Part shown: piece after piece, positions 32,260 through 47,500 of the stretch
Layout: every line of letters begins with the position of its first letter
Position numbering within the stretch: the stretch's first letter is position 1
Assembly: GCA_002269645.1 (NCBI GenBank)
Contig: NIVC01000636.1
Coordinates: forward strand, 271,646-335,645
Direction of reading: 5' to 3'
Origin: Macrostomum lignano
Lineage: Eukaryota
DNA length: 64,000 nucleotides
The notes under the pieces: generated by a model
What the model was told of the DNA's origin: nothing
The model's input: the letters and a program-made list of their open reading frames with translations, nothing else
Database searches by the model: none
Translations under genes and position numbers: made by a program

Positions 32260-32793
32260 TCATCCCTTGGCCTGTGCGGCCAGCCACTCCAGGCCGGCCG
32301 TGAGGCCCTCGCCGCTCAGGGCGCAGCAGGCCTGAATGTGCCAGGGGTTGGCCCGGATGCTGGTGAGGTCCAGCGCCTGGCTGATCTCGGCCGCGGACAG
32401 CCGGCCGTTGATGTCCTGCTTGTTGGCGAGCACGAGCAGCCGCGCCCGCTTCAGGTGGTCCGAGGCGAGCATCTTGTACAGCTCGTCCTTGATGACGGCC
32501 AGCCGCTGCCTGTCGGAGGAGTCGATGACGAGGATGATGAAGTCGGTGCTCTGGTAGTAGGTCTCCCACGTGGCCCGGATGGAGGTCTGGCCGCCCAGGT
32601 CCCACATCACGAAGTGGATGTTGCGCCAGCGCAGCTGCTCCACGTTGGAGCCGATGGTAGGCGAGGTGTGCACGGCCTCGCCCAGCACCAGCTGGTACAG
32701 CACGGTGGTCTTGCCGGCATTGTCCAGCCCGACCAGCAGTACTTTGTGCTCTTGGGTACCAAAAAGGCTCCACAGCCTGGCTATTATCAGCCC
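32260..32793 (-). CDS. ARL5: ADP-ribosylation factor-like GTPase 5; exon starts at Gly2 and the initiator ATG is not adjacent in the genome
   Basis: [31 protein letters not shown] and [13 protein letters not shown] match ARL5A/B. Acceptor TTGCAG| at 32799-32794 is followed by GGG CTG ATA. In-frame TAA at 32820-32818 with no ATG in between. Confidence 0.95.
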
Positions 32794-35195
32794 CTGCAAG
32801 TTGGCGAGTGCCGTGATTTACTGATAGGCTTCAACTGAACTCGAATTAACAACCAGGTAGGATCCTGGGATTGGGATCCTACTTGACCCTTATTCAATAC
32901 AAGGCTGGATGAGACAAGGAATTAGGCAGGCAGTCAAGATGGAATTGAAAGTTTCATGCTTGCATATCGAACTATTTGACAACAGGGAATAATCTGGTCT
33001 GTTCTTGCCACATTCTCTCAAACAAACCACATGCTAAGAGTTCACCTTCGACCTGCTGAATCATCTTGGGACCAGTCTGGTTCAGTATAAGCTGTGGTCC
33101 ATTTCTCTTCTACTCCCTTGGGTGTGGGATGAGAGATGCTAATGCCAGACCTGGGGAGTTGCAGCTCTCTACAAAAGTACATGTTTTTTGTTATATGGAT
33201 ATATAAGCTTGTAGACAGGACATACAAATACATATATGGCTTTGGGAATGCATATTGCCTATATCTAATTAGTAATATTTGCCAATCAACAACAGAATTA
33301 ATTTAGACTTATTAAAAGATCATTGGAGCCCTTGATTTAATTGGTAAGAAGGGGGGGGGGGTAAAACAGAAGAAATAAATTAATTTTGCCCATTTCAAAG
33401 CTTTTGTAAAGCAGAGGGAACTATCAAATTCTTAGGTTAGGGACTCAAGCAATAGAGATCTTCTAAGCAATTGAGGCTAAAGTTGAGATAAATTCAATCC
33501 TAGCCATTCTTATAATATTAATAAATAATAATTTACAATATTACACTTGCCTTAATGGCCAGATGTGCAACCAACAGCTTAGCTATAGCTATTATGCAAT
33601 TATGAAAAGTTATAGGAAATTAATTAGCTATAGATATAAACATAAGTAAAGAATAAGAAAATGTATAAACTGCTATAGATATAGATACAAGAAAGTTTTT
33701 GTTATGGTTGAGCTCTTGCTTGTTGGATAAGTTCACAATATATAAAATTTTATTTTTGACAAAAAATCTAATATATAGTATTGTATATTAAAAATAATTA
33801 TTAACAATATATTATTACCTATAACTTTAAAGCTATCATCTATTGGAATAAAAAATATTTTAGGACATAAAGGAATCTTAATAGCCAAAGTTAGTGATAT
33901 AATTATTGAATGAAATAAGAAAATCATGCTAAAAAATAGAAAAAAGAAAGAACTCATGATGAACTTATGAAAAGAAAGAGAAAAGATTGTCTATAAATGA
34001 AAGATTGAAAAAATATACATTAAAAGACCTTTCTTTTGCTGATTTGTTTTTTTCATATACTAAAAATGGTTTATCAATAGTGAATAGGTATCTATGCATA
34101 CATGCCCAACCTCAAAATTTCACCTGTCCGATGCAACTTAGTTTTATCTAGATTAGTTAGTTCCTCCTAATTGCAACTTAGTTCTTCTTGATTGCAACTC
34201 AGTTACCCCAATTGCAACTTAATTTTCAATTTGTATGATTTTCCTTGCCTTTTTTCTTTTCTTCTTTTTCTCTTTTCTTTTCTCTCTCTCCTCTCTCCTT
34301 TCTTTTCTTTTTCTCTTTCTCTCCTTCATTCTTTTCCCAATTTTTTCAATTTTCGCTTTTTTGATTTTGCAACTTACCTTGGCTAATGTTCCCAAAGATG
34401 TTCCCAAATCAGTACATGTATTTTTATTAAGCTCTAGCTCATTGCTAATAAATGGATGAAATATTATGCTAGCTAAGACATCAGAAATTATGCTTTTTTA
34501 TAGTTGATATAGCCCATAATAGTAATAATTTTATACTTTTCTACTATGCTAGGCCTAGGGCTAAAAAAGGTCTACATTTTATTTTACTAATTAGCAGATA
34601 ATCAATGTTTAATAGGTTTTAAAATTGTTAGACCTTTAACTTAAATAAGATAAATAGCATAGTAACTAAGTAAGCTGTAGTAGTAGGTAGGCTGTAGTAG
34701 GCCAGTGCAGGCAAAAATAGGCCCACCTAATAGTAATAGAATGGATATTGGATAAGATAAAATTGAATGGTTTAAATTGAACCAACAAAAGTTAAGAGTA
34801 AGACAAAGTGCTGACAAGCAAAAAGAAATATACAGAATAGAGAGTACTCGTATATATATACTAACGTAACCCACTTTTATAGCAGGAACTAAACTAAAAA
34901 GACTAACACTAGTCGCCTACCTTGACTGAGATTAAATTAAGCAAATAAAGACCAACCCTACCTCCTATACATAGTGATGGTGTGACGTACTTGCCTATAT
35001 TTGGAAGATTATTCGGCCTATTTTTTAGCACTTATTATCACACTTAAAATTATTTTGAGATTTACTGAAACAATTAAACTCAAATAGTTAAATTCGTTGA
35101 AATACCATATTGAGTTTCTTTACTTTTGTTTTTTTACACTATTCTGCCATTTTAATTTTAGATTTTACACGAAACAAACGTGAACAATAATGCCA

Positions 35196-35613
35196 GTAAA
35201 GTGTAAAAAGTTACACACCCAGTTTTTTTGGGGAAAACGTTACCTTCAAATTGCGTTCAAAGAGCACAATGAAATTGAAAATAATATTGTATTTTGATTT
35301 CGTTTGTCTAGTTCAAATTAAAATTGCAAGTTAGAAGCTTATAGAATGGGTAAAATAAATCACAAGAGCATTTTTATTTTTTCATTGGGTAAGCGTGTGT
35401 AAACCCTGGGTAATTTCAGGTACGTTTTTGGGGTAATGTCTTACCCAGCAATTAAACACTCATTTATTGGCCTCATCATCTATATTTTATGAATAATTAT
35501 TCTATGATTTATGCTGCATAGGCGATAGCAAGTTATTTTCAATTTCATTGCGCTCTTTGAATGCAATTTGAAGGTAACGTTTTCGGGTAACTGGGTAACT
35601 TTTTACACTTTAC
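35196..35613. mobile_element. Foldback/MITE-like element with ~85-bp inverted arms
   Basis: 35196-35284 (GTAAAGTGTAAAAAG...AAAACGTTACCTTCAAATTGCGTTCAAAGAGCACAATGAAATTGAAAATAA) is the near reverse complement of 35533-35613. No clear target-site duplication. Confidence 0.6.
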
Positions 35614-35829
35614 CATAAAGCTTGAACTGCAGAGCAAACATCTGCAGATAGCAAGCATCCCCAGATATTGTTGAAGCATCCACCCAGATAGCAAGCATCT
35701 TCCGAGATAGCAAGCATCCCCCAGATATTGTTGAAGCATCTACCCAGATATAAAAAATCCTGCAGATAGCAAGAATCCCTAAATTGCAAGCATCCCTGGA
35801 TAGAAAGAATCCGATACATGTAGCCTAGC

Positions 35830-36140
35830 TTATCAAGTGCAATAATCCTTTGTTTGCCAATGCAGTTAATCCTTGGTTTATCAAGCGCAGTAATCCTTGG
35901 TTATCAAGTGCAGAAATCCTTGGTTTATTAAGTGCAGTAATCCTTGGTTTATCAAGTGCAGTAATCCATGGTTTATCAAGTGCAGAAATCCTTGGTTTAT
36001 CAAGTGTAGTAATCTTTGGTTTATCAAGTGCAATAATCCTTGGTTTATCAAGTGCAGTAATCCTTGGTTTATCAAGTGCAGTAATCCTTGGTTTATCAAA
36101 TGCAGTAATCCTTGATATATCAAGTGCAGTAATCCTTGGT
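35830..36140. repeat. 24-bp minisatellite (ATCAAGTGCAGTAATCCTTGGTTT)
   Basis: Direct observation. Confidence 0.88.
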
Positions 36141-36191
36141 TTATTAAGTGAATGAAAAGAAAATTTCACTACTTTTATATACTTTATATAC

Positions 36192-36258
36192 ACTACTAAG
36201 ATTTGAACCTAGGTCGCTGCATTAGTAGTCCAGTATGTTCAGCTCTAGGCTAGCTCTC
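36192..36258 (-). pseudogene. Degenerate tRNA-like sequence (pseudogene or SINE head)
   Basis: Minus strand TAGCCTAGAGCTGAA...CTGGA CTACTAA TGCAG CGAC CTAGG TTCAAAT CTTAG gives an A-box, anticodon arm and T arm with mismatches; the acceptor stem does not pair. Confidence 0.45.
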
Positions 36259-38310
36259 ATTGAAGTTAAATGAATTTGTAGCTCATATAAATCAACACTC
36301 ACACAAAGTCAGGTAGAGTAAAAGTCACATGAAGCAGTTATGATATAATTAATTTCTTAGGCAGTCAGTATCAGTGTCTATACTAACAATATGGTTAGGC
36401 AATATAAATCAAGTACTGTGCTATGCTTCTACACTCAACACTAATGCAATTCAACTAGTATACAGACAATAAATAAAAAGCCTATTGTGATGCAATCTAT
36501 TTCAGAATCAGAATTCAACCAGTCAGTTTTTTTCTTAGCATTCTTATGATGCATTTAAAGTTGAAAGAGCTGCTTGACCTTTGCAAAAAGCATGTTTTTC
36601 AAATATTTAATCCCTTTAGCATCAAGCAATTTCTTAGCAACATTGCAAGTACTGTCATGGAAAAATTTCTGATTGAACAGTGCATGTTCAAAGAAAATTG
36701 GCTTAGCCATTTTTGCTAAAACTGATCACATACTTACCTAGATAGATAGATACCTACCAACAGACCATTTTTAGTATATAGAAAATGTTATTCTTAAAAA
36801 AGTGGCAATTTTTTTCTAGTTCTTTTAATTAAAGCATGTTTAAAGCATTATATGGCATTTTTTTGTTTTACAATACTTGCACTTTGTGTCAATTTTGTTA
36901 TATAATACCCATTGGAAATTAGTGAGAATTGAAATAGATGTAGCTTTGATTGCAAAAATGTTTCAATCATAGCTTGCTAGCACACAATCCTTATATTCAC
37001 TTTCATTATACAATGCCCTTAATGGAGAATTTGTTAAGAATGCATTGTAAAATGAAAGTGAGGAGGTATAGAAGCAAAAATAAGGGAGAATATTAAGAAT
37101 TGGATATAGCCATGAAGAATCTTACAATTTTAGCTTATTAGTGCACAATCCTTATATTCACTTTCATTATAGGCCTACGATGCCCTCAATAGAGAATTTG
37201 TTAAGAATACATTGTAAAATGAAAGTGAGGGGGATATAGCAAATAAATGAAAGACTGAAAAGAAATGGGTATGACTGTTAACAAATTATCCCTTATTTTC
37301 ATTTTTATCCCCCTCACTTTTGTTTTAGAATGCATTCTTAATAAAGTCTTATATATTGGTCTATCTATCAAATTGCAGCCATTTGTTGTCTTGGTATCTA
37401 TTTTCTTAATTAACTAGTATTTCTAAAGCTGCTAAAAATTATCATTGATTTTAAATGAGTGACCAATAGTACAAAATTATATTTACACTACTATAAAAGT
37501 ACAACATAATATTGGTTAAAATTATTTCTATACATACTTCTGAAGAGTCAGAATCAACATTTGAAAATTGACCTTCCATTTTTTGCAAATTGCAAGTGTA
37601 GTGTCCTGATATATTGCTAATCCTTGTTTTGTAAAAGGTTTTGTTTATTCACTCAAATTTTGGATGCAATAATAAAAATATTATGTTGCATCTTTATTTG
37701 AAGAATAACAGCATTGTTTATCTATAGACCAACACATTTTTTTGTTTTTTTTCTACAAAGACATTTAATCACTCTTTAATTGGTGGTTCCTTAAAATTAG
37801 AAAGGATAGGTAGTAGATAATGGATAATGGATAATAGTAAAAGATGGCCGGTAGAGGGGGGGTTGCTACTTTAGATATATTAGATAGGTAAGTACTAGAT
37901 AACACTGTATATTAGTAGCAATTTTAGTGTATATAAGTCACACTTTGGAAGATTTTAAAAGATTAGAAGATTGTATTTTGTCATTTGAACTAGAAATGAT
38001 CAAATAGATTTACATCATGGCTATATTGATATATTGCCATGATAAAACTGGTTTCTTTATATACTTTAGTCAAATTTAATAATAGTAAGAGGCTGCCAAA
38101 GCCACTTTTCAATTCTAAGCAGATCTATAAAAGTATAAGGGATTATGTTATTTAACCTGACAATAATTTAGAGAAATTAGTCTAGTTGTACATATGCAGT
38201 TGGTTACTAGGCCCATTTGCCCATGGGTTAAATATGAGATTTGTCTATTTGTTTTAACTAAAGACAAAGTTATTAACTAATATAGTCATTTGTGGCTATC
38301 GCGCCTGCAG

Positions 38311-40266
38311 CACCGCCTGTGGTGCACTGGCTTAGTGCGCCATCTCTGGCGGCGTCGCAGGCGGCAGGCAGCCATTGTGGCCGCTGCCGTCACCGCCCTG
38401 CTGGCGCTCCTGCTGCTGGCCAGCGCCTCGCTCAGAAGGCCGCTGCCGCCGCCCTTCCAGCTGGAATCCGCCAGCACCATCGAATCCGTTGACCTGTTCG
38501 ACTCTCGCCGCGATGTCATCGTGCTGCTGCACATGCAGAAGACCGGCGGCTCGCACCTCAACCGCCAGCTCGTCTCCGGCTTGCGCCGACCCGACATGCG
38601 CTGCCAGTGCGGCCTCGGCGGCCTCGGCGGTGCGCGCCGGCGGAAATGGCGCTGCAGCTGCCGCAACAGCCGCGGCGACCTGTGGATTGTGAGCCGCTAC
38701 AGCACCGGCTGGCTCTGCGGCCTCCACGCCGACTTCGCCGCGCTGTCTGCCTGCGTGCCCGGCCAGCTGGCCGCGCTCGACTCCGACTTTGAGAGGCCGC
38801 GCCGCCTCCGCTACGTCACCATGCTGCGCCGGCCGGCCGACCGCTTCCTGTCCGAGTGGCAGCACGCGCGCCGCGGCGCCACCTGGCGGAAATCGCAGCC
38901 CACCTGCCGCGGCCGCCGGCCTCCGCCCTGCCGGACTGGCGACGGCGCCTGGCGCGGCGTCTCCCTGGCCGAGTTCGCCGCCTGCCGCGCCAACCCGGCG
39001 CTGAACCGGCAGGCGCGCATGCTGGCCAACGCCAGCGGCCTGCCCTGCCGGGCCGTCTTCGCCAACGGGAATCGAACCGCGGACCTACTGCTGGCCAGTG
39101 CGCTTCACAATCTGGTAGGGATGGCGGCGTTCGGCCTGACAGAGTGGCAGGTGAGCGAGCTGCTGGGAAGCTGGGACTTTTATGGAGTTGAGTATCTGGG
39201 ATATCTGATGGTGTTGAGGATCTGGGATATCTGATGGAGTTGAGGATCTGGGATATCTGGTGGTGTTGAGGATCTGGGATATCTGATGGAGTTGAGGATC
39301 TGGGATATCTGATGGAGTTGAGGATCTGGGATATCTGATGGAGTTGAGGATCTGGGATATCTGATGGAGTTGAGTATCTGGGATATCTGATGGAGTTGAG
39401 GATCTGGGATATCTGATGGAGTTGAGTATCTGGGATATCTGATGGAGTTGAGGATCTGGGATATCTGATGGAGTTGAGGATCTGGGATATCTGATGGTGT
39501 TGAGGATCTGGGATATCTGATGGTGTTGAGGATCTGGGATATCTGATGGAGTTGAGGATCTGGGATATCTGATGGTGTTGAGGATCTGGGATATCTGATG
39601 GAGTTGAGGATCTGGGATATCTGATGGTGTTGAGGATCTGGGATATCTGATGGGGTTGAGGATCTGGGATATCTGAATCTGATGGAGTTGAGGATCTGGG
39701 ATATCTGATGGAGTTGAGGATTTGGGATACTGAGGGAGCTGTAAAGACTCTTCAAGCGGATTTGCTGTTGTCACGCGGATGTCACTCCACCAAGCACCAC
39801 TCTCGGACCCGCGCAGATCCTGACGCAATACCTGCTGAGCAGGCGCCTCGGCCTGAGCTTCAGCCGCCTGTTCTGGCAGCAGGACGCCACCGTCGCCTCT
39901 AATTGGCGCGCCAGCGGCAACTTCAGCCTCGTCGCCGACGCCGGCGACCTCCAGCAGAGGCGACTGGCGGAGCTCGCCAACCCCGCCGACGCCCGCCTGT
40001 ACGCAGCGGCCGAGCGGCTGTTTTTCGGCCAGGCCCGCCGCCTGCTGGCTCGGGAGCCGCTGCTGTCGGCCGGCCAGCGGGCTCGAGTCCGGGACGCCGA
40101 CTCCGCAATCGGCGGCGACGCACTGACCGCGCTGGCCCGCCGGGTGCTGCTGGAGCTGGGCGCCGTTGAAGTGGACGACGCCGAGAAGGCAGACATCCGG
40201 CGCCGGGTGCGCAAGAAGCTCCTGCGGGCTGGCAACGACGAGGCCGAGTCGGATTCGAACTCGTGA
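38311..40266 (+). CDS. HS6ST: Heparan sulfate 6-O-sulfotransferase, 2 coding exons; initiator ATG not adjacent in the genome
   Basis: Exon 38311-39150 (TM anchor, LHMQKTGG 5'-PSB motif, WIVSRYSTGWLCGLHAD, YVTMLRRPADRFLSEWQHARRGATW, FGLTEWQ|GTGAGC) joins exon 39817-40266 (GCGCAG|ILTQYLL..., stop TGA). Begins at acceptor CCTGCAG|CAC. In-frame TAA at 38278. Confidence 0.93.
39185..39730. repeat. 26-bp minisatellite in the HS6ST intron (TGGGATATCTGATGGAGTTGAGGATC)
   Basis: Direct observation. Confidence 0.93.
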
Positions 40267-40424: not shown

Positions 40425-40795
40425 TGTCTGTTAGACAGACTGTTAGATTATCTGGGTCGGTTAGACAGGCTGTTAGATTATCTGGATCTGTTAGACAGAC
40501 TGTTAGATTATCTGGGTCTGTTAAACAGACTGTTAGATTCTGTAGGTCTGTTAGACAGACTGCTAGATTCTCTAGGTCTGTTAGACAGACTGCTAGACAG
40601 GCTGGATCTGTTAGACAGACTGTTAGATTATCTGGATCTGTTAGACAGACTGTTAGATTATCTGGGTCTGTTAGACAGGCTGTTAGATTATCTGGATCTG
40701 TTAGACAGGCTGTTAGATTCTGTAGGTCTGTTAGATAGACTGCTAGATTTTGTAGGTCTGTTAGACAGACTGTTAGATCATCTGGGTCTGTTAGA
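40425..40795. repeat. 30-bp minisatellite (TGTTAGATTATCTGGGTCTGTTAGACAGAC)
   Basis: Direct observation. Confidence 0.88.
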
Positions 40796-41174
40796 CAGTA
40801 GCTGCCAGGCCCACTAAGCAGCACCTGCTCTCGCTCAGCTCTGTGTACTCACTGTATTGCTTTGTATCGGTTGCAAAAGTACAGCCCCAGATAGTTCATG
40901 TACTGTAAGGCGCTTCATACTTGTACTTTAATATCGTATTGTTTGCGCGAAGATTGCTCAGTTCTGTATGCAGCAATTTTTTTTAAATTACTTTTTTACT
41001 CAGCTTTAATATGTTTTGTAATAACTGAATGCGCTGTGTCATTACTTAGGCTGTAAATTCACCTGCATAAGCGGTTTCCATTGCGCTGGTATTTAAACTT
41101 GTAATCAGCTTCATTTTAATGGGCTTGACTCCCTTCACGGGCAGTCGACCTTTAGGGATCCCAGTCTTCCGGCT

Positions 41175-41470
41175 GATAGTGGAGTAGCTGGTCACAATCT
41201 GCCAACTGATAAAGGGGTAGCTGGTCACAATCTGCCAACTGATAGAGGGGTAGCTGGTCACAATCTGCCAACTGTAGAGTGGTAGCTGGTCACAATCTGC
41301 CAACTGTAGAGTGGTAGCTGGTCACAATCTGCCAACTGTAGAGTGGTAGCTGGTCACAATCTGCCAACTGTAGAGTGGTAGCTAGTCACAATCTGCCAAC
41401 TGTAGAGTGGTAGCTGGTCACAATCTGCCAACTGTAGAGTGGTAGCTAGTCACAATCTGCCAACTGATCT
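41175..41470. repeat. 32-bp minisatellite (GGTAGCTGGTCACAATCTGCCAACTGTAGAGT)
   Basis: Direct observation. Confidence 0.88.
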
Positions 41471-41682: not shown

Positions 41683-42520
41683 CGATCTGACCCACTGGTC
41701 TGATCTGCTGACCAAATCAGCTGATTTACTGACCAAATCAGCTGATCTACTGACCAAATCAGCTGATCTACTGACCAAATCAGCTGATCTACTGACCAAA
41801 TCAGCTGATCTACTGACCAAATCAGCTGATCTACTGACCAAATCAGCTGATCTACTGACCAAATCAGCTGATCTACTGACCAACTGGTCTGATCTGCTGA
41901 CCCAACTGGTCTGATCTGCTGACCAACTGGTCTGATCTGCTGACCAAATCAGCTGATTTACTGACCAAATCAGCTGATCTACTGACCAAATCAGCTGATC
42001 TACTGACCAAATCAGCTGATCTACTGACCAAATCAGCTGATTTACTGACCAAATCAGCTGATCTACTGACCAAATCAGCTGATCTACTGACCAAATCAGC
42101 TGATCTACTGACCAAATCAGCTGATCTACTGACCAAATCAGCTGATCTACTGACCAAATCAGCTGATCTACTGACCAAATCAGCTGATCTACTGACCAAA
42201 TCAGCTGATCTACTGACCAACTGGTCTGATCTGCTGACCCAACTGGTCTGATCTGCTGACCAACTGGTCTGATCTGCTGACCAACTGGTCTGATCTGCTG
42301 ACCCAACTGGTCTGATCTGCTGACCAACTGGTCTGATCTGCTGACCCAACTGGTCTGATCTGCTGACCAACTGGTCTGATCTGCTGACCCAACTGGTCTG
42401 ATCTGCTGACCCAACTGGTCTGATCTGCTGACCCAACTGGTCTGATCTGCTGACCCAACTGGTCTGATCTGCTGACCAACTGGTCTGATCTGCTGACCCA
42501 ACTGGTCTGATCTGCTGACC
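41683..42520. repeat. Compound minisatellite of two related 21-22-bp units in alternating blocks
   Basis: CTGACCAAATCAGCTGATCTA blocks alternate with CTGACC(C)AACTGGTCTGATCTG blocks. Confidence 0.9.
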
Positions 42521-42984
42521 AACAATTTTACGAGCTACTTTACCGGCAAATTGCAATTCATATTCACAAGCTTCGATAACTTTCTGTTGGCACAATTCAC
42601 ACGTACTTTACTGTTTAAATAAAGCACTACTGGCAATGGCAAGCCCGCAAGCATTGCTGGCTCCTGTTGGTTGCTATGCAATAAAATTCTGGCTTTGCGC
42701 TGTCACTCGGTTTGGCTTTCATCATTTCTGCATTCCCACGATTTGCAGCGGAAGTCTGCTTGGAGAGGCTGCATTGTTGAATGGCTTCTGAATGTTTCAG
42801 GAGCCCCCGCCATGAGGATGAAAATGAGGATCGAGCTGAAAAGTCCAGCTATTTCGAGTAGCTTCTGCTACCAGTAAGGGCTGGTGTCAGATTGCACTAT
42901 TGTTGTATGCATTCGCTGTGTGCTGGGGTGGATCCTGCAGTTGCGGACTGGGGCTTTGGAACTGCTGATCTGCGAGAGTAAAAA

Positions 42985-43980
42985 ACAGGCATCTGCCAGC
43001 ACTAGCTACCAGGCATCTACCAGCACTAGATACCAGGCATCTGCCAGCACTAGCTACCAGGCATCTGCCAGCACTAGCTACATGTACCAGGCATCTACCA
43101 GCACTAAGCTACCAGGCATCTGCCAGCACTAGCTACCAGGCATCTCTTAGCACTAGCTACCAGGCATCTGCCAGCACTAGATACCAGGAATCTGCCAGCA
43201 CTAGATACCAGGAATCTACCAGCACTAGATACCAGGCATCTGCCAGCACTAGCTACCAGGCATCTGCCAGCACTAGCTACATGTACCAGGCATCTACCAG
43301 CACTAAGCTACCAGGCATCTGCCAGCACTAGCTACCAGGCATCTCTTAGCACTAGCTACCAGGCATCTACCAGCACTAGCTACCAGGCATCTACCAGCAC
43401 TAGCTACCAGGAATCTACCAGCACTAGCTACCAGGCATCTCTTAGCACTAGCTACCAGGCATCTACCAGCACTAGCTACCAGGAATCTACCAGCACTAGA
43501 TACCAGGAATCTACCAGCACTAGATACCAGGCATCTACCAGCACTAGCTACCAGGCATCTCTTAGCACTAGCTACCAGGCATCTACCAGCACTAGATACC
43601 AGGCATCTCTTAGCACTAGCTACCAGGCATCTACCAGCACTAGCTACCAGGCATCTCTTAGCACTAGCTACCAGGCATCTACCAGCACTAGCTACCAGGA
43701 ATCTACCAGCACTAGATACCAGGAATCTACCAGCACTAGATACCAGGCATCTACCAGCACTAGCTACCAGACATCTACCAGCACTAGCTACATGTACCAG
43801 GAATCTACCAGCACTAGCTACCAGGCATCTACCAGCACTAGCTACCAGACATCTACCAGCACTAGATACATGTACCAGGAATCTACCAGCACTAGCTACA
43901 TGTACCAGGAATCTACCAGCACTAGCTACATGTACCAGGAATCTACCAGCACTAGCTACCAGGCATCTACCAGCACTAGC
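42985..43980. repeat. 24-bp minisatellite (TACCAGGCATCTACCAGCACTAGC)
   Basis: Direct observation. Confidence 0.92.
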
Positions 43981-44113
43981 TACAGTATCAAACAGCCCAA
44001 CCCATCAGACCCTCATGTAGGCGTATAGGCTGCAATTAAAAGCAGATGTAGAGCACAACTCCGAGCAGTGAAAATGACAGCCAGTCTCAAAAGCAGAAGC
44101 TGCAACAAGTGCG

Positions 44114-44310
44114 CGAACTCGGAAGAAATTTGCTGTTAATTTTCACCAAACCGAGAGTTCAGCAGCAGATATTGATACACCGAACTCGGAAGAATTTGCT
44201 GTTAATTTTCACCAAACCGAGAGTTCAGCAGCAGATATTGATACACCGAACTCGGAAGAATTTGCTGTTAATTTTCACCAAACCGAGAGTTCAGCAGCAG
44301 ATATTGATAC
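44114..44310. repeat. Three tandem copies of a 66-bp unit
   Basis: Units start at 44114, 44181 and 44247. Confidence 0.88.
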
Positions 44311-44530
44311 ACGAGAGGCGATGTGCGAGCATGAGGTGCGGTTATTGGAAAAACATTTCTCTTATGCAAAAAGCGGGGGAGGACGATGGTGCAAGTGTGA
44401 CAGAGTCATGCATGAGATGCTACACATCAGGAGTGAGTGGACATGCTGCGAGAGACGAGTTGCCTTCTTGCAGTGAGTATCAAATATTTATCATGTTGAG
44501 CTCCTGTCGAGCGGCCATTGCGCGGCCCGG

Positions 44531-47500
44531 CTAACTGTAATCAATGTAGCCCTTCTCTCGCCCTGTCGGCGACGCCGTGGTCGGCGGCTGCTTCTCCTTC
44601 GGCTTGCGGATCAGCAGGCCGTTGCGGTCGGTCCTGGGGATGATGCCACCCCGGTGGGCGTGGGGCCGCGGTGCCTCCCGGCTCACCGTGCGGTACACGG
44701 CGTGGAAGCCCTTAAAGCTGATCGTGTCGTCGCTGCGGAACCGGATGTGCAGACTCTGCCTGGAGGAGTAGATCGGCCCGTCCGGACCCTGGGGCGCGGG
44801 ATGAAGGGCAATATTTCATGGTGAATTAATTACATTTCGGCAGATTTTATTAAAGAAACACAAATCCTCCAGGATCTCCTGTGGAAATCCCTACTGGGGA
44901 ACACCTTGCAGGTAATCCCTACAGGGGAACACCTTGCGGGAATCCGTACTGGGGAACACCTTGCAGGTAATCCCTACTGGGGAACACCTTGCGGGAATCC
45001 GTACTGGGGAACACCTTGCGGGGGAACCTTGCGGGGGAATCCGTAGTGGGGAACACCTTGCGGGAATCCGTAGTGGGGAACACCTTGCGGGAATCCGTAC
45101 TGGGGAACACCTTGCGGGAATCCGTACTGGGTAACATCTTGCAGGGGAATTCGTATTGGGGAACACCTTGCGAGGAATCCATAGTGGGGAACACCTGACG
45201 GCAGTACGGATTACAGGTGGATACCTTGTAAATCCTCTGCAATGAAGTTTTTGCGAGTCCCCACTGGGATTAATCTCTTTATGGATATTTCGAGAAACCT
45301 TACTGAGAAATAACTACCGATATATGGAATTATCCTTTACCGGAGAAAAACTTTCTTTTTGGTAATAAAAAAGCATGGATTTGGGAATCCATGCAGGGAC
45401 TAACTACCCCGTTTGCTAAAGCTCAATTTAGCGGAAACAGAGTTCGAACCCCAGACGCTGACGCACCTTCCTCTCCCGCAGGTTGCCGCAGTAGCGGCCC
45501 AGCAACACACCTCTGTCGTTGTCGTCATCGAAGATGTCCACGTAGTCGTAGCTGCGGGTTGGCCGGAGCGGCGGGGAAGGTAGTGAGTTCCCCCAATCCC
45601 AATCTGGGAAAAAACTTCCACGCGTTCGGAATCAGAACGCGGCCAACTCACCCGCACTCGATTTCGCTCTCCAGCTCAAATGTCTCCATGTTGAGCACGA
45701 TCACCTCCTCGGGATTGGAGGTGGTGAGGGTCCAGTTGCAATTCTCCCTGGTCCCGTAGTCCTTGTCCCCGAAGCCGGCGTGGCTGTAGAAGCTCGCGTT
45801 CGCGGACGAGGCGATCAGCTGCCCACCGCAGACTGTTGAGTGACAGGTGTGGGGGGAGGCCCTGACTTTCTAATCGGGGTCAGGCAATCGCCTGTACACT
45901 GTTAGAACACTACTTCAGGCTACTGTTAGAACACTACTTCGCCTGAACACTACTTATAGTAGTTTATCAATTCGCGCTCCTCACTGGACGAGTGATCCGC
46001 ATTGAAGCCCTTCCGCTGCAGCGAGGAGTCGCTGACGAAGCCCACAAACATCGAGTTGCCGGTGCTGATCACCGGAGTCGGCGGCATCGCGTCGCCGCAG
46101 AAGACTCCGATTCGCTCCGAGGTGGCATCGGGACCGTCGCGGATCTCCACGTGGTCGTAGGCGCAGTCTGGATGGCGCTCGATTTCAAAGTGCTTGAACA
46201 CCTGGGGTGGGAGGAGGGGATCTCGAAGTGCTTGAACACCTGAGGAGAGGGAGGAGACTTTGACTTGACTTAGCTGCAGGGCTGTCCCGGAGGGGACACA
46301 GCGGGAAGGCGCGGGCGCCCATTCCGCTAGTCCCTGAACGGCCGAGAGGGAGGAGGGGATCTCGAAGTGCTTGAACACCTGGGGGTGGGAGGAGGGGATC
46401 TCGAAGTGCTTGAACACCTGAGGAGAGGGAGGAGGGGATCTCGAAGTGCTTGAACACCTGAGGAGAGGGAGGAGGGGATCTCGAAGTGCTTGAACACCTG
46501 GGGGTGAGAGGAGGGGATCTCGAAGTGCTTGAACACCTGAGGAGAGGGAGGAGGGGATCTCGAAGTGCTTGAACACCTGGGGATGAGAGGAGGGGATCTT
46601 GAAGTGCTTGAACACCTGGGGATGAGAGGAGGGGATCTTGAAGTGCTTGAACACCTGGGGATGAGAGGAGGGGATCTCGAAGTGCTTAAACACCTTGGGG
46701 TGGGAGGAGGGGATCTCGAAGTGCTTGAACACCTGGGGGTGGGAGGAGGGGATCTTGAAGTGCTTGAACACCTGAGGAGAGGGAGGAGGGGATCTCGAAG
46801 TGCTTGAACACCTGAGGAGAGGGAGGAGGGGATCTCGAAGTGCTTGAACACCTGGGGAGAGGGAGGAGGGGATCTCGAAGTGCTTGAACACCTGAGGAGA
46901 GTTAGGAGGGGATCTTGAAGTGCTTGAACACCTGAGGAGAGGGAGGAGGGGATCTCGAAGTGCTTGAACACCTTGGGGTGGGAGGAGGGGATCTCGAAGT
47001 GCTTGAACACCTGAGGAGAGGGAGGAGGGGATCTCGAAGTGCTTGAACACCTGGGGGTGGGAGGAGGGGATCTCGAAGTGCTTGAACACCTGAGGAGAGG
47101 GAGGAGGGGATCTCGAAGTGCTTGAACACCTGAGGAGAGGGAGGAGGGGATCTCGAAGTGCTTAAACACCTGGGGGTGGGAGGAGGGGATCTCGAAGTGC
47201 TTAAACACCTGGGGGTGGGAGGAGGGGATCTCGAAGTGCTTAAACACCTGGGGGTGGGAGGAGGGGATCTCGAAGTGCTTAAACACCTGGGGGTGGGAGG
47301 AGGGGATCTCGAAGTGCTTAAACACCTGGGGGTGGGAGGAGAGGATCTCGAAGGACTTGTAACTGCGATCCCCAGCTCCCTACTCAGAGTAGCCAAGCTC
47401 TGCTCATACCAGTTTGATGCGGTGCCCCGGCGTGGTGCGGAAGTTCCAGCTGCACCGCTTTTCCAGCGGGTACCTGCGGGGATAGTTGGGGCTGGAGAAC

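What the first reader, a model, noticed from the sequence alone, without database searches (positions are those of the whole stretch)
38278..38540. HS6ST also lacks an ATG and starts in phase 0 at a 3' splice site
Seen: CGCCTGCAG|CAC CGC CTG TGG opens the frame encoding the basic cytoplasmic tail and TM anchor (HRLWCTGLVRHLWRRRRRQAAIVAAAVTALLALLLL). There is an in-frame stop at 38278, and the first in-frame ATG is inside the catalytic HMQKTGG motif. Inference: an SL-derived AUG would give MHRLW..., a complete type II Golgi protein. Without it the anchor and PAPS-binding motif could not be made.
Basis: partly seen in the sequence, partly recalled or inferred. Interest (0 to 1): 0.75.

Follow-up and report, generated by a model that had tools for sequence, protein, structure and literature searches.

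The report
Flatworm sulfotransferase gene borrows its start codon
This Macrostomum lignano heparan-sulfate 6-O-sulfotransferase gene has no start codon of its own and almost certainly gets its AUG from the spliced leader added by trans-splicing, a mechanism already known in flatworms, so it is a clean example and not a new phenomenon.

Summary
A TAA lies at 38278-38280. A CTGCAG acceptor ends at 38310. The reading frame opens at CAC (38311) in phase 0. The first in-frame genomic ATG is codon 75 (38533), inside HMQKTGG. The window is Macrostomum lignano DNA, collinear with GenBank NIVC01000636.1, gene Mlig029954g1. The gene has two exons (38311-39150 and 39817-40266) and encodes a clear HS6ST (PDB 5t03, E=1.5e-54).

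The M. lignano spliced leader (SL) is 35 nt and ends in ATG. A spliced cDNA contig of the ortholog (75% identical, species not identified) starts with the last 14 nt of that leader. It is joined at the homologous site (…TTGCATG|CACCGCCTG…), with the leader ATG in frame. The 22 codons after the junction evolve like coding sequence (dN/dS about 0.25). All three M. lignano copies are annotated as 5'-partial in GenBank, with models starting at or 3 nt after the acceptor. The divergent neighbour, an ARL5-like GTPase, also opens directly after a TTGCAG acceptor, at the conserved Gly2.

The mechanism is known (Cheng et al. 2006). No SL-containing M. lignano reads or translation data could be reached here.

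The parts
38278..38280 (+). In-frame TAA that closes the reading frame 10 codons upstream of the acceptor
38305..38310 (+). 3' splice (trans-splice) acceptor CTGCAG. It fits the [T/C]TNCAG motif reported for M. lignano SL acceptors.
   Evidence: motif from PMC8629364
38311..39150 (+). HS6ST exon 1, 280 codons in phase 0, with no initiator ATG. It holds the basic tail, the TM anchor, the stem and most of the sulfotransferase domain. It ends at the donor CAG|GTGAGC.
38368..38433 (+). Predicted type II signal-anchor helix (AAIVAAAVTALLALLLLASASL), preceded by RRRRRQ
   Evidence: Kyte-Doolittle maximum 2.56
38513..38515 (+). First genomic ATG downstream of the acceptor, in frame +1, opening a 59-codon ORF. 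A ribosome scanning an mRNA without the leader AUG would meet it first.
38533..38535 (+). First in-frame genomic ATG (codon 75), inside the HMQKTGG 5'-phosphosulfate-binding motif
   Evidence: alignment to HS6ST3
39151..39816 (+). Single intron (GTGAGC...GCGCAG). Most of it is a 26-nt tandem repeat of 21 copies (39182-39738).
   Evidence: The ortholog cDNA reads TEWQ|ILTQ without interruption.
39817..40266 (+). HS6ST exon 2, ending at the TGA stop at 40264-40266
   Evidence: 100% coverage by the GenBank protein P0001
32260..32793 (-). Divergent neighbour, an ARL5-like GTPase in a single exon. The ORF opens directly after a TTGCAG acceptor (32799-32794 on the minus strand) at the conserved Gly2, with no genomic ATG. 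This is a second gene in the window that depends on the leader AUG.
   Evidence: query residue 1 aligns to residue 2 of ARL5 chains; annotated product of 177 aa

Best explanation
The HS6ST pre-mRNA is transcribed from a promoter somewhere in the AT-rich 5.5 kb between it and the divergent ARL5-like gene. Its 5' outron is removed by SL trans-splicing at the CTGCAG acceptor ending at 38310. The 35-nt M. lignano spliced leader (…CAATTTATTGCATG) is joined directly to CAC at 38311. The leader's 3'-terminal AUG, 32 nt from the cap, becomes codon 1. Translation gives MHRLWCTGLVRHLWRRRRRQ, then the TM anchor, stem and sulfotransferase domain: a complete 430-residue type II Golgi enzyme.

Shown here: the gene structure, the lack of any usable genomic ATG, the SL-to-acceptor junction in an ortholog cDNA, and coding-type conservation of the N-terminal peptide. 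Inferred: the same junction in M. lignano, and ribosomal initiation at the leader AUG.
For: 1. Organism and gene. The query is 99% identical over 100% of its length to M. lignano BOX15_Mlig029954g2. The window is collinear with the Mlig029954g1 locus. The match to HS6ST3 structure 5t03 has E=1.5e-54 and conserves QKTGG and LSEW-H-RGATW.
2. Spliced leader. The M. lignano SL is CGGTCTCTTACTGCGAAGACTCAATTTATTGCATG, with a single ATG at its 3' end (PMC8629364).
3. Ortholog cDNA. L001 (Logan SRR28338166, spliced) begins CAATTTATTGCATG|CACCGCCTGCGG. That is the last 14 nt of the SL joined at the homologous position. The ATG is in frame and no stop follows.
4. Substitution pattern. Codons 2-23 show 8 synonymous and 8 nonsynonymous differences over 17.2 and 48.8 sites, giving dN/dS about 0.25, against 0.27 for the whole gene. 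There is one in-frame 3-nt indel. The binomial p for synonymous excess is 0.034.
5. Annotation. All three M. lignano copies are 'partial' in GenBank. Their models start at the acceptor, exactly in two copies. That annotation placed mRNA 5' ends at SL-read peaks where such reads existed (PMC5730564).
6. No alternative start. No in-frame ATG occurs before codon 75, and the first ATG met is out of frame.
7. Internal control. The neighbouring ARL5-like gene starts at Gly2 right after a TTGCAG acceptor.
8. Precedent. The flatworm SL 3'-terminal AUG serves as initiator Met. This is Cheng et al. 2006, as cited in PMC9851317 and PMC12582326. The Macrostomum SL ATG is called a translation start codon in PMC10468722.
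Against: - No M. lignano transcript or SL-containing read across 38311 could be retrieved. The exact protein, with or without Met, is not in the collection, and an N-terminal search found no M. lignano cDNA fragments.
- The GenBank model for this very locus starts 3 nt downstream of the acceptor, at 38314, where there is no AG. This is unexplained.
- The AUG context fixed by the leader (U at -3, C at +4) looks weak by the vertebrate Kozak rule (my own knowledge; not tested for this species).
- The ortholog has an extra in-frame ATG at codon 23, so in that species the leader AUG is not strictly required.
- The two other M. lignano copies have CCGCAG, which fits the published acceptor motif less well than CTGCAG.
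- The dN/dS test on 22 codons has little power.
Confidence: 0.88

Rival explanations
1. An unannotated upstream cis exon with its own ATG, phase 0, is spliced to the acceptor at 38311. The gene would then be conventionally initiated.
For: The acceptor is an ordinary CAG. Parasitic flatworms are reported to share acceptors between cis- and trans-splicing (PMC12582326). No M. lignano reads were examined here.
Against: The ortholog cDNA carries the SL directly on this junction. The 5 kb upstream is 20-41% GC with no exon-like GC-rich block, while the exons are 60-78% GC. No gene or exon is called between the ARL5-like gene and HS6ST in any of the three copies. The upstream neighbour is on the opposite strand. 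All three GenBank models are 5'-partial and start at or 3 nt after the acceptor.
Confidence: 0.05
2. The mRNA is trans-spliced, but translation does not use the leader AUG. It starts instead at a near-cognate codon (for example GTG at codon 24, which is ATG in the ortholog) or at the internal ATG at 38533.
For: The leader AUG has U at -3 and C at +4. The ortholog has an ATG at the position of the M. lignano GTG.
Against: The leader AUG is 5'-proximal and in frame. The 22 codons before the ortholog's internal ATG are conserved with dN/dS about 0.25 and include the basic stretch that orients a type II anchor. Starting at 38533 would remove the anchor, and an out-of-frame ATG at 38513 precedes it. 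Use of the flatworm SL AUG as initiator is experimentally documented (Cheng et al. 2006, as cited).
Confidence: 0.05
3. The locus is a 5'-truncated pseudogene or an assembly artefact, and no full protein is made.
For: There is no start codon in the genome. The UniProt models of this gene are fragmentary and partly in the wrong frame (P0003, P0026).
Against: Three separately assembled copies all keep the full 428-432-codon ORF, both splice sites and the acceptor. The ortholog is expressed and spliced. Whole-gene dN/dS is 0.27. The catalytic motifs are intact.
Confidence: 0.02

Closest known systems
[quoted passage not shown]
   Same: The SL ends in AUG. It is trans-spliced to an acceptor directly in front of an ORF that lacks its own AUG, and the leader AUG is in frame and completes the protein. 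[quoted passage not shown]
   Different: The species differs: this is a free-living basal rhabditophoran, not a parasite. The SL body also differs. Translation from the SL AUG was shown experimentally in schistosomes but not here. This particular gene, HS6ST, was not found named as such a case in the papers searched.
M. lignano SL trans-splicing as annotated in Mlig_3_7 (Wudarski et al. 2017, PMC5730564; Ustyantsev & Berezikov 2021, PMC8629364)
   Same: The genome and the 35-nt SL are the same. The acceptor fits the [T/C]TNCAG motif. The gene model's 5' end lies at the acceptor. The gene is monocistronic and trans-spliced.
   Different: Those papers, as far as the passages read here show, do not discuss the SL ATG as start codon or list genes that depend on it. 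GenBank simply labels these proteins 'partial'.
Heparan-sulfate 6-O-sulfotransferases (HS6ST1-3; zebrafish HS6ST3 structure 5t03)
   Same: The sulfotransferase domain aligns over residues 47-352 (E=1.5e-54). The QKTGG and LSEW-H-RGATW motifs are conserved, and an N-terminal type II anchor is present.
   Different: Other animal HS6STs retrieved here (P0004-P0009) encode their own initiator Met. This one has a very GC-rich, Arg/Ala-rich sequence and a short Gly/Arg insert after the PAPS loop.
slORFs: ORFs created by SL addition in nematodes, ascidians and kinetoplastids (slORFfinder, PMC9851317)
   Same: The SL supplies the start codon for an ORF in the recipient mRNA.
   Different: Those are mostly new or alternative ORFs, often with near-cognate starts. 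Here the SL AUG completes the conserved main ORF.

Membership tests
SL-AUG-initiated flatworm mRNA (sensu Cheng et al. 2006) | The species' spliced leader ends with AUG immediately before its GU donor | tested here: met
   The published M. lignano SL is CGGTCTCTTACTGCGAAGACTCAATTTATTGCATG, followed by GTAAG in the SL RNA gene (PMC8629364). It has one ATG, at the 3' end. No SL RNA gene lies in this window.
SL-AUG-initiated flatworm mRNA (sensu Cheng et al. 2006) | A 3' splice acceptor sits directly in front of the ORF | tested here: met
   CTGCAG|CAC at 38305-38310|38311. It fits [T/C]TNCAG. The AG is conserved in all three homeologous copies.
SL-AUG-initiated flatworm mRNA (sensu Cheng et al. 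2006) | The SL is physically joined to that acceptor in mature mRNA (ortholog) | tested here: met
   The L001 cDNA starts with the last 14 nt of the SL, joined to CACCGCCTG…. The contig is spliced, with no intron at TEWQ|ILTQ.
SL-AUG-initiated flatworm mRNA (sensu Cheng et al. 2006) | The SL is physically joined to that acceptor in M. lignano itself | tested here: inconclusive
   The evidence is only indirect. The GenBank models start at the acceptor and are 5'-partial, and that annotation placed 5' ends from SL reads where available. No M. lignano cDNA or read was retrievable.
SL-AUG-initiated flatworm mRNA (sensu Cheng et al. 2006) | The SL AUG is in frame with the main ORF, with no intervening stop | tested here: met
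   The exon starts in phase 0 and frame 0 has no stop through exon 1. The same holds in the ortholog.
SL-AUG-initiated flatworm mRNA (sensu Cheng et al. 2006) | No genomic AUG can encode the complete protein, so the gene depends on the SL AUG | tested here: met
   An in-frame TAA lies upstream. The first in-frame ATG is codon 75, within HMQKTGG, and an earlier out-of-frame ATG lies at 38513.
SL-AUG-initiated flatworm mRNA (sensu Cheng et al. 2006) | Ribosomes initiate at the SL AUG | not testable with these tools
   This needs ribosome profiling, N-terminal proteomics or a reporter assay. The indirect support is the coding-type conservation of codons 2-23.
Heparan-sulfate 6-O-sulfotransferase (Pfam PF03567 Sulfotransfer_2; HS6ST subfamily) | Sequence homology across the sulfotransferase domain to characterised HS6STs | tested here: met
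   5t03 HS6ST3: E=1.5e-54, query residues 47-352. Animal HS6STs score E=1e-36 to 1e-50. Pfam PF03567 scores 22.4 bits on exon 1 alone, just above the 22-bit cut-off.
Heparan-sulfate 6-O-sulfotransferase (Pfam PF03567 Sulfotransfer_2; HS6ST subfamily) | PAPS-binding loop (h-h-H-x-Q-K-T-G-G) and the conserved SEW-x-H-x-x-RGATW block | tested here: met
   VLLHMQKTGGS and FLSEWQHARRGATW align with identical residues in HS6ST3.
Heparan-sulfate 6-O-sulfotransferase (Pfam PF03567 Sulfotransfer_2; HS6ST subfamily) | Type II topology: short basic cytoplasmic tail followed by a single N-terminal TM anchor | tested here: met
   RRRRRQ is followed by a 22-residue hydrophobic stretch with a Kyte-Doolittle maximum of 2.56. 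Homologs P0004, P0006 and P0009 show the same layout. This rests on hydropathy only; no dedicated topology predictor was run.
Heparan-sulfate 6-O-sulfotransferase (Pfam PF03567 Sulfotransfer_2; HS6ST subfamily) | 6-O-sulfation of glucosamine in heparan sulfate | not testable with these tools
   This needs an enzyme assay.

The most novel reading that the evidence does not exclude
In M. lignano, dependence on the leader AUG could be more than an annotation nuisance. It could act as an obligatory gate: HS6ST and the divergently transcribed ARL5-like gene, both Golgi/endomembrane proteins sharing one 5.5-kb intergenic region, can be translated only after SL trans-splicing. The level of trans-splicing would then control their protein output. 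The paralog Mlig021069g1 has its own ATG, and its 5' UTR contains a sequence resembling the acceptor and first codons of this gene. That would record an evolutionary switch between leader-supplied and genome-encoded start codons.
Probability: 0.15. Interest if true: 0.45.

Novelty: new member of a known kind. Interest (0 to 1): 0.25.

Why it matters
The practical value lies in annotation. Genes of this kind are labelled 'partial' in GenBank. In UniProt/WormBase-style models they are given wrong-frame N-termini (P0003 and P0026 start in another frame of the same DNA). This hides the signal anchor and would mislead localisation, orthology and transgene design.

The case also extends use of the spliced-leader AUG from parasitic flatworms to a basal free-living model species. 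The support is an ortholog cDNA and a neighbouring gene that shows the same feature. It does not reveal a new mechanism.

Tried and rejected
- Exact look-up of the window protein, with and without an added Met: neither is in the protein collection.
- A second homology search with only the N-terminal 169 residues, meant to catch M. lignano cDNA fragments: it returned only UniProt fragments and unrelated animals.
- A search for the SL tail in the window, up to 2 mismatches, and an Rfam scan: there is no SL RNA gene here.
- Supplement and full-text searches for Mlig029954/Mlig024635 and for the run id SRR28338166: nothing found. The species of the ortholog cDNA therefore stays unidentified.
- Alternative nearby AG acceptors (ATAG ending at 38285, TTAG ending at 38335): both would put the leader ATG out of frame (read), and neither matches the ortholog junction.
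- TTG/GTG 'starts' listed by the bacterial-code ORF tool: not relevant for a eukaryote.
- Structure prediction: judged unnecessary because sequence homology to a solved HS6ST is unambiguous.
Full report
**Observation**

- A TAA at 38278-38280 is in frame with the ORF.
- Ten codons later the AT-rich upstream DNA ends in GCGCCTGCAG.
- A very GC-rich reading frame (60-78% GC) opens at CAC, position 38311, in phase 0.
- Frame 0 has no stop through the 280 codons of exon 1. The other two frames have 5 and 2 stops.
- The translation starts HRLWCTGLVRHLWRRRRRQAAIVAAAVTALLALLLLASASL.
- The first in-frame ATG is the 75th genomic codon (38533-38535), inside VLLHMQKTGG.
- The only earlier ATG downstream of the acceptor (38513) is in frame +1 and opens a 59-codon dead-end ORF.
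- Hydropathy peaks at 2.56 (19-residue window) over AIVAAAVTALLALLLLASA. This stretch directly follows the basic run, as expected for a type II signal anchor.

**What the gene is**

Exon 1 ends at CAG|GTGAGC (39150|39151). A 666-nt intron follows, made largely of 21 copies of a 26-nt tandem repeat. Exon 2 runs from 39817 to the TGA at 40264-40266.

The joined 429 codons are 99% identical over their full length to GenBank 'hypothetical protein BOX15_Mlig029954g2, partial [Macrostomum lignano]'. They match the solved zebrafish HS6ST3 (5t03) at E=1.5e-54 over residues 47-352. QKTGG and LSEW-H-RGATW are conserved in that alignment. The window is collinear with NIVC01000636.1 of assembly GCA_002269645.1, gene Mlig029954g1.

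M. lignano carries three near-identical copies: Mlig029954g1, Mlig029954g2 and Mlig024635g1. All three are labelled 'partial', and all keep the acceptor AG, the frame and the full ORF.

**Evidence for the spliced-leader start codon**

1. The single M. lignano spliced leader is the 35-nt CGGTCTCTTACTGCGAAGACTCAATTTATTGCATG. Its only ATG is at the 3' end, immediately before the GTAAG donor (PMC8629364).

2. A 1550-nt contig from a public sequencing run (Logan SRR28338166, locus L001) encodes the ortholog at 75% identity. It is spliced at the same exon junction, so it is cDNA. It begins CAATTTATTGCATG|CACCGCCTGCGGTGC. That is the last 14 nt of the leader joined at exactly the homologous position. 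The ATG is in frame and no stop follows.

3. The 22 codons between that junction and the ortholog's first internal ATG read MHRLRCVGLVRHLWRRRRQAVT, against MHRLWCTGLVRHLWRRRRRQAAI here.
   - They differ by 8 synonymous and 8 nonsynonymous changes over 17.2 and 48.8 sites, giving dN/dS of about 0.25. The whole gene gives 0.27.
   - There is one in-frame 3-nt indel.
   - The synonymous excess has binomial p=0.034. The sample is small, but it fits translated sequence.

4. In two of the three M. lignano copies the GenBank model starts exactly at the base after the AG. The Mlig_3_7 annotation placed mRNA 5' ends with the TBONE pipeline, using peaks of trimmed SL-containing reads where such reads were available (PMC5730564). 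A model that starts exactly at an AG and is 5'-partial is what such a cut would produce. I could not confirm that SL reads were the evidence used for these particular models.

5. CTGCAG fits the [T/C]TNCAG motif reported for M. lignano trans-splice acceptors (PMC8629364).

6. No exon is annotated upstream in any copy. The 5 kb upstream is 20-41% GC with no exon-like block. The upstream neighbour is on the opposite strand.

**An internal control in the same window**

The divergent neighbour is an ARL5-like GTPase on the minus strand (32793-32260). It reads …CCAACTTGCAG|GGG CTG ATA ATA GCC AGG CTG TGG…. Its first residue after the acceptor aligns with residue 2 of ARL5 chains 1yzg and 1z6y (E=1e-77 and 6e-73). 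Only the initiator Met of the MG… N-terminus is missing from the genome. The annotated product is 177 aa and starts at that Gly. Two adjacent genes therefore show the same architecture.

**Mechanism**

Shown: the architecture, the absence of a usable genomic start, the leader-acceptor junction in the ortholog, and coding-type conservation of the N-terminal peptide.

Inferred: the outron is removed, and the leader is joined at 38311 in M. lignano. The leader AUG, 32 nt from the cap, then starts translation of MHRLW…, a 430-residue type II enzyme. Without trans-splicing, a scanning ribosome would first meet the out-of-frame ATG at 38513. Even the in-frame ATG at 38533 would give a protein without the anchor, the stem or the strand preceding the PAPS loop.

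**Comparison with what is known**

Use of the flatworm leader's 3'-terminal AUG as initiator methionine was established for Schistosoma mansoni by Cheng et al. 2006 (J Biol Chem 281:733). I read this only as cited in PMC9851317 and PMC12582326. [quoted passage not shown] All reported flatworm leaders end in ATG. [quoted passage not shown]

This finding is therefore a further, well-supported member of a known kind in a free-living species. It is not a new mechanism.

**Weak points**

- I could not retrieve M. lignano transcripts or reads spanning the junction.
- The species behind SRR28338166 is unidentified.
- The GenBank model of this very locus starts 3 nt after the acceptor, where there is no AG. 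I cannot explain this.
- The leader fixes U at -3, and the exon gives C at +4, which is a weak context by vertebrate rules.
- The ortholog has an additional in-frame ATG at codon 23, so the strict dependence seen in M. lignano is not shared.

**Rivals**

- An upstream cis exon: about 0.05.
- Initiation elsewhere on the trans-spliced mRNA: about 0.05.
- A pseudogene or assembly artefact: about 0.02. Three intact copies, an expressed ortholog and a dN/dS of 0.27 argue against it.

**Verdict**

The mechanism is already known, so interest is low to moderate. The main value is correct annotation: the UniProt models P0003 and P0026 have wrong-frame N-termini for this gene.

Noticed in passing
window 32260-32799 (minus strand): An ARL5-like GTPase gene has no genomic ATG. 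Its ORF opens right after a TTGCAG acceptor at the conserved Gly2, and residue 1 aligns with residue 2 of ARL5 PDB chains. It is a second gene dependent on the leader AUG, divergently oriented 5.5 kb from the HS6ST acceptor.
   Followed up: yes
L004 6001 = window 38314: The GenBank model for this exact locus (Mlig029954g1, P0025, 428 aa) starts 3 nt downstream of the acceptor and so lacks the His codon. The two other copies start exactly at the acceptor. No AG precedes 38314. This is probably an annotation quirk, but it is unexplained.
   Followed up: partly
proteins P0003 and P0026 (UniProt A0A1I8I7P…, A0A1I8I9G…), mapping to window ~38290-39150: These UniProt models of the gene begin in a different reading frame of the same DNA (…AIAPAAPPVVHWLSAPSLAAS…). 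They rejoin the true frame only near RKWRCSCRNSRGDLW. Gene prediction was evidently forced off frame by the missing ATG.
   Followed up: partly
L006 2925-3003 (paralog Mlig021069g1, NIVC01000903.1): The HS6ST paralog has its own ATG. About 70 nt upstream, its 5' UTR contains TATGCAG|CACCGATGGCACTGCAAGCTGTAA, which resembles this gene's acceptor and first codons (CAG|CACCGCCTGTGGTGC). If trans-spliced there, the leader AUG would open only an 8-codon uORF. This may be a trace of a switch between leader-supplied and genomic start codons.
   Followed up: no
window 35642-36150, 39182-39738, 40426-40798, 41184-41466, 41700-42522, 42986-43983, 44114-44312, 44886-45196: The gene is surrounded by dense minisatellite arrays with periods of 21-66 nt and up to 40 copies: in the intron, just beyond the stop codon and in the flanks. 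They create long spurious ORFs on both strands.
   Followed up: no
window 33250-38290: A sharp compositional boundary separates 20-41% GC intergenic/outron DNA from 60-78% GC exons. The step falls within about 20 nt of the acceptor, so GC content alone marks exon starts in this genome.
   Followed up: partly
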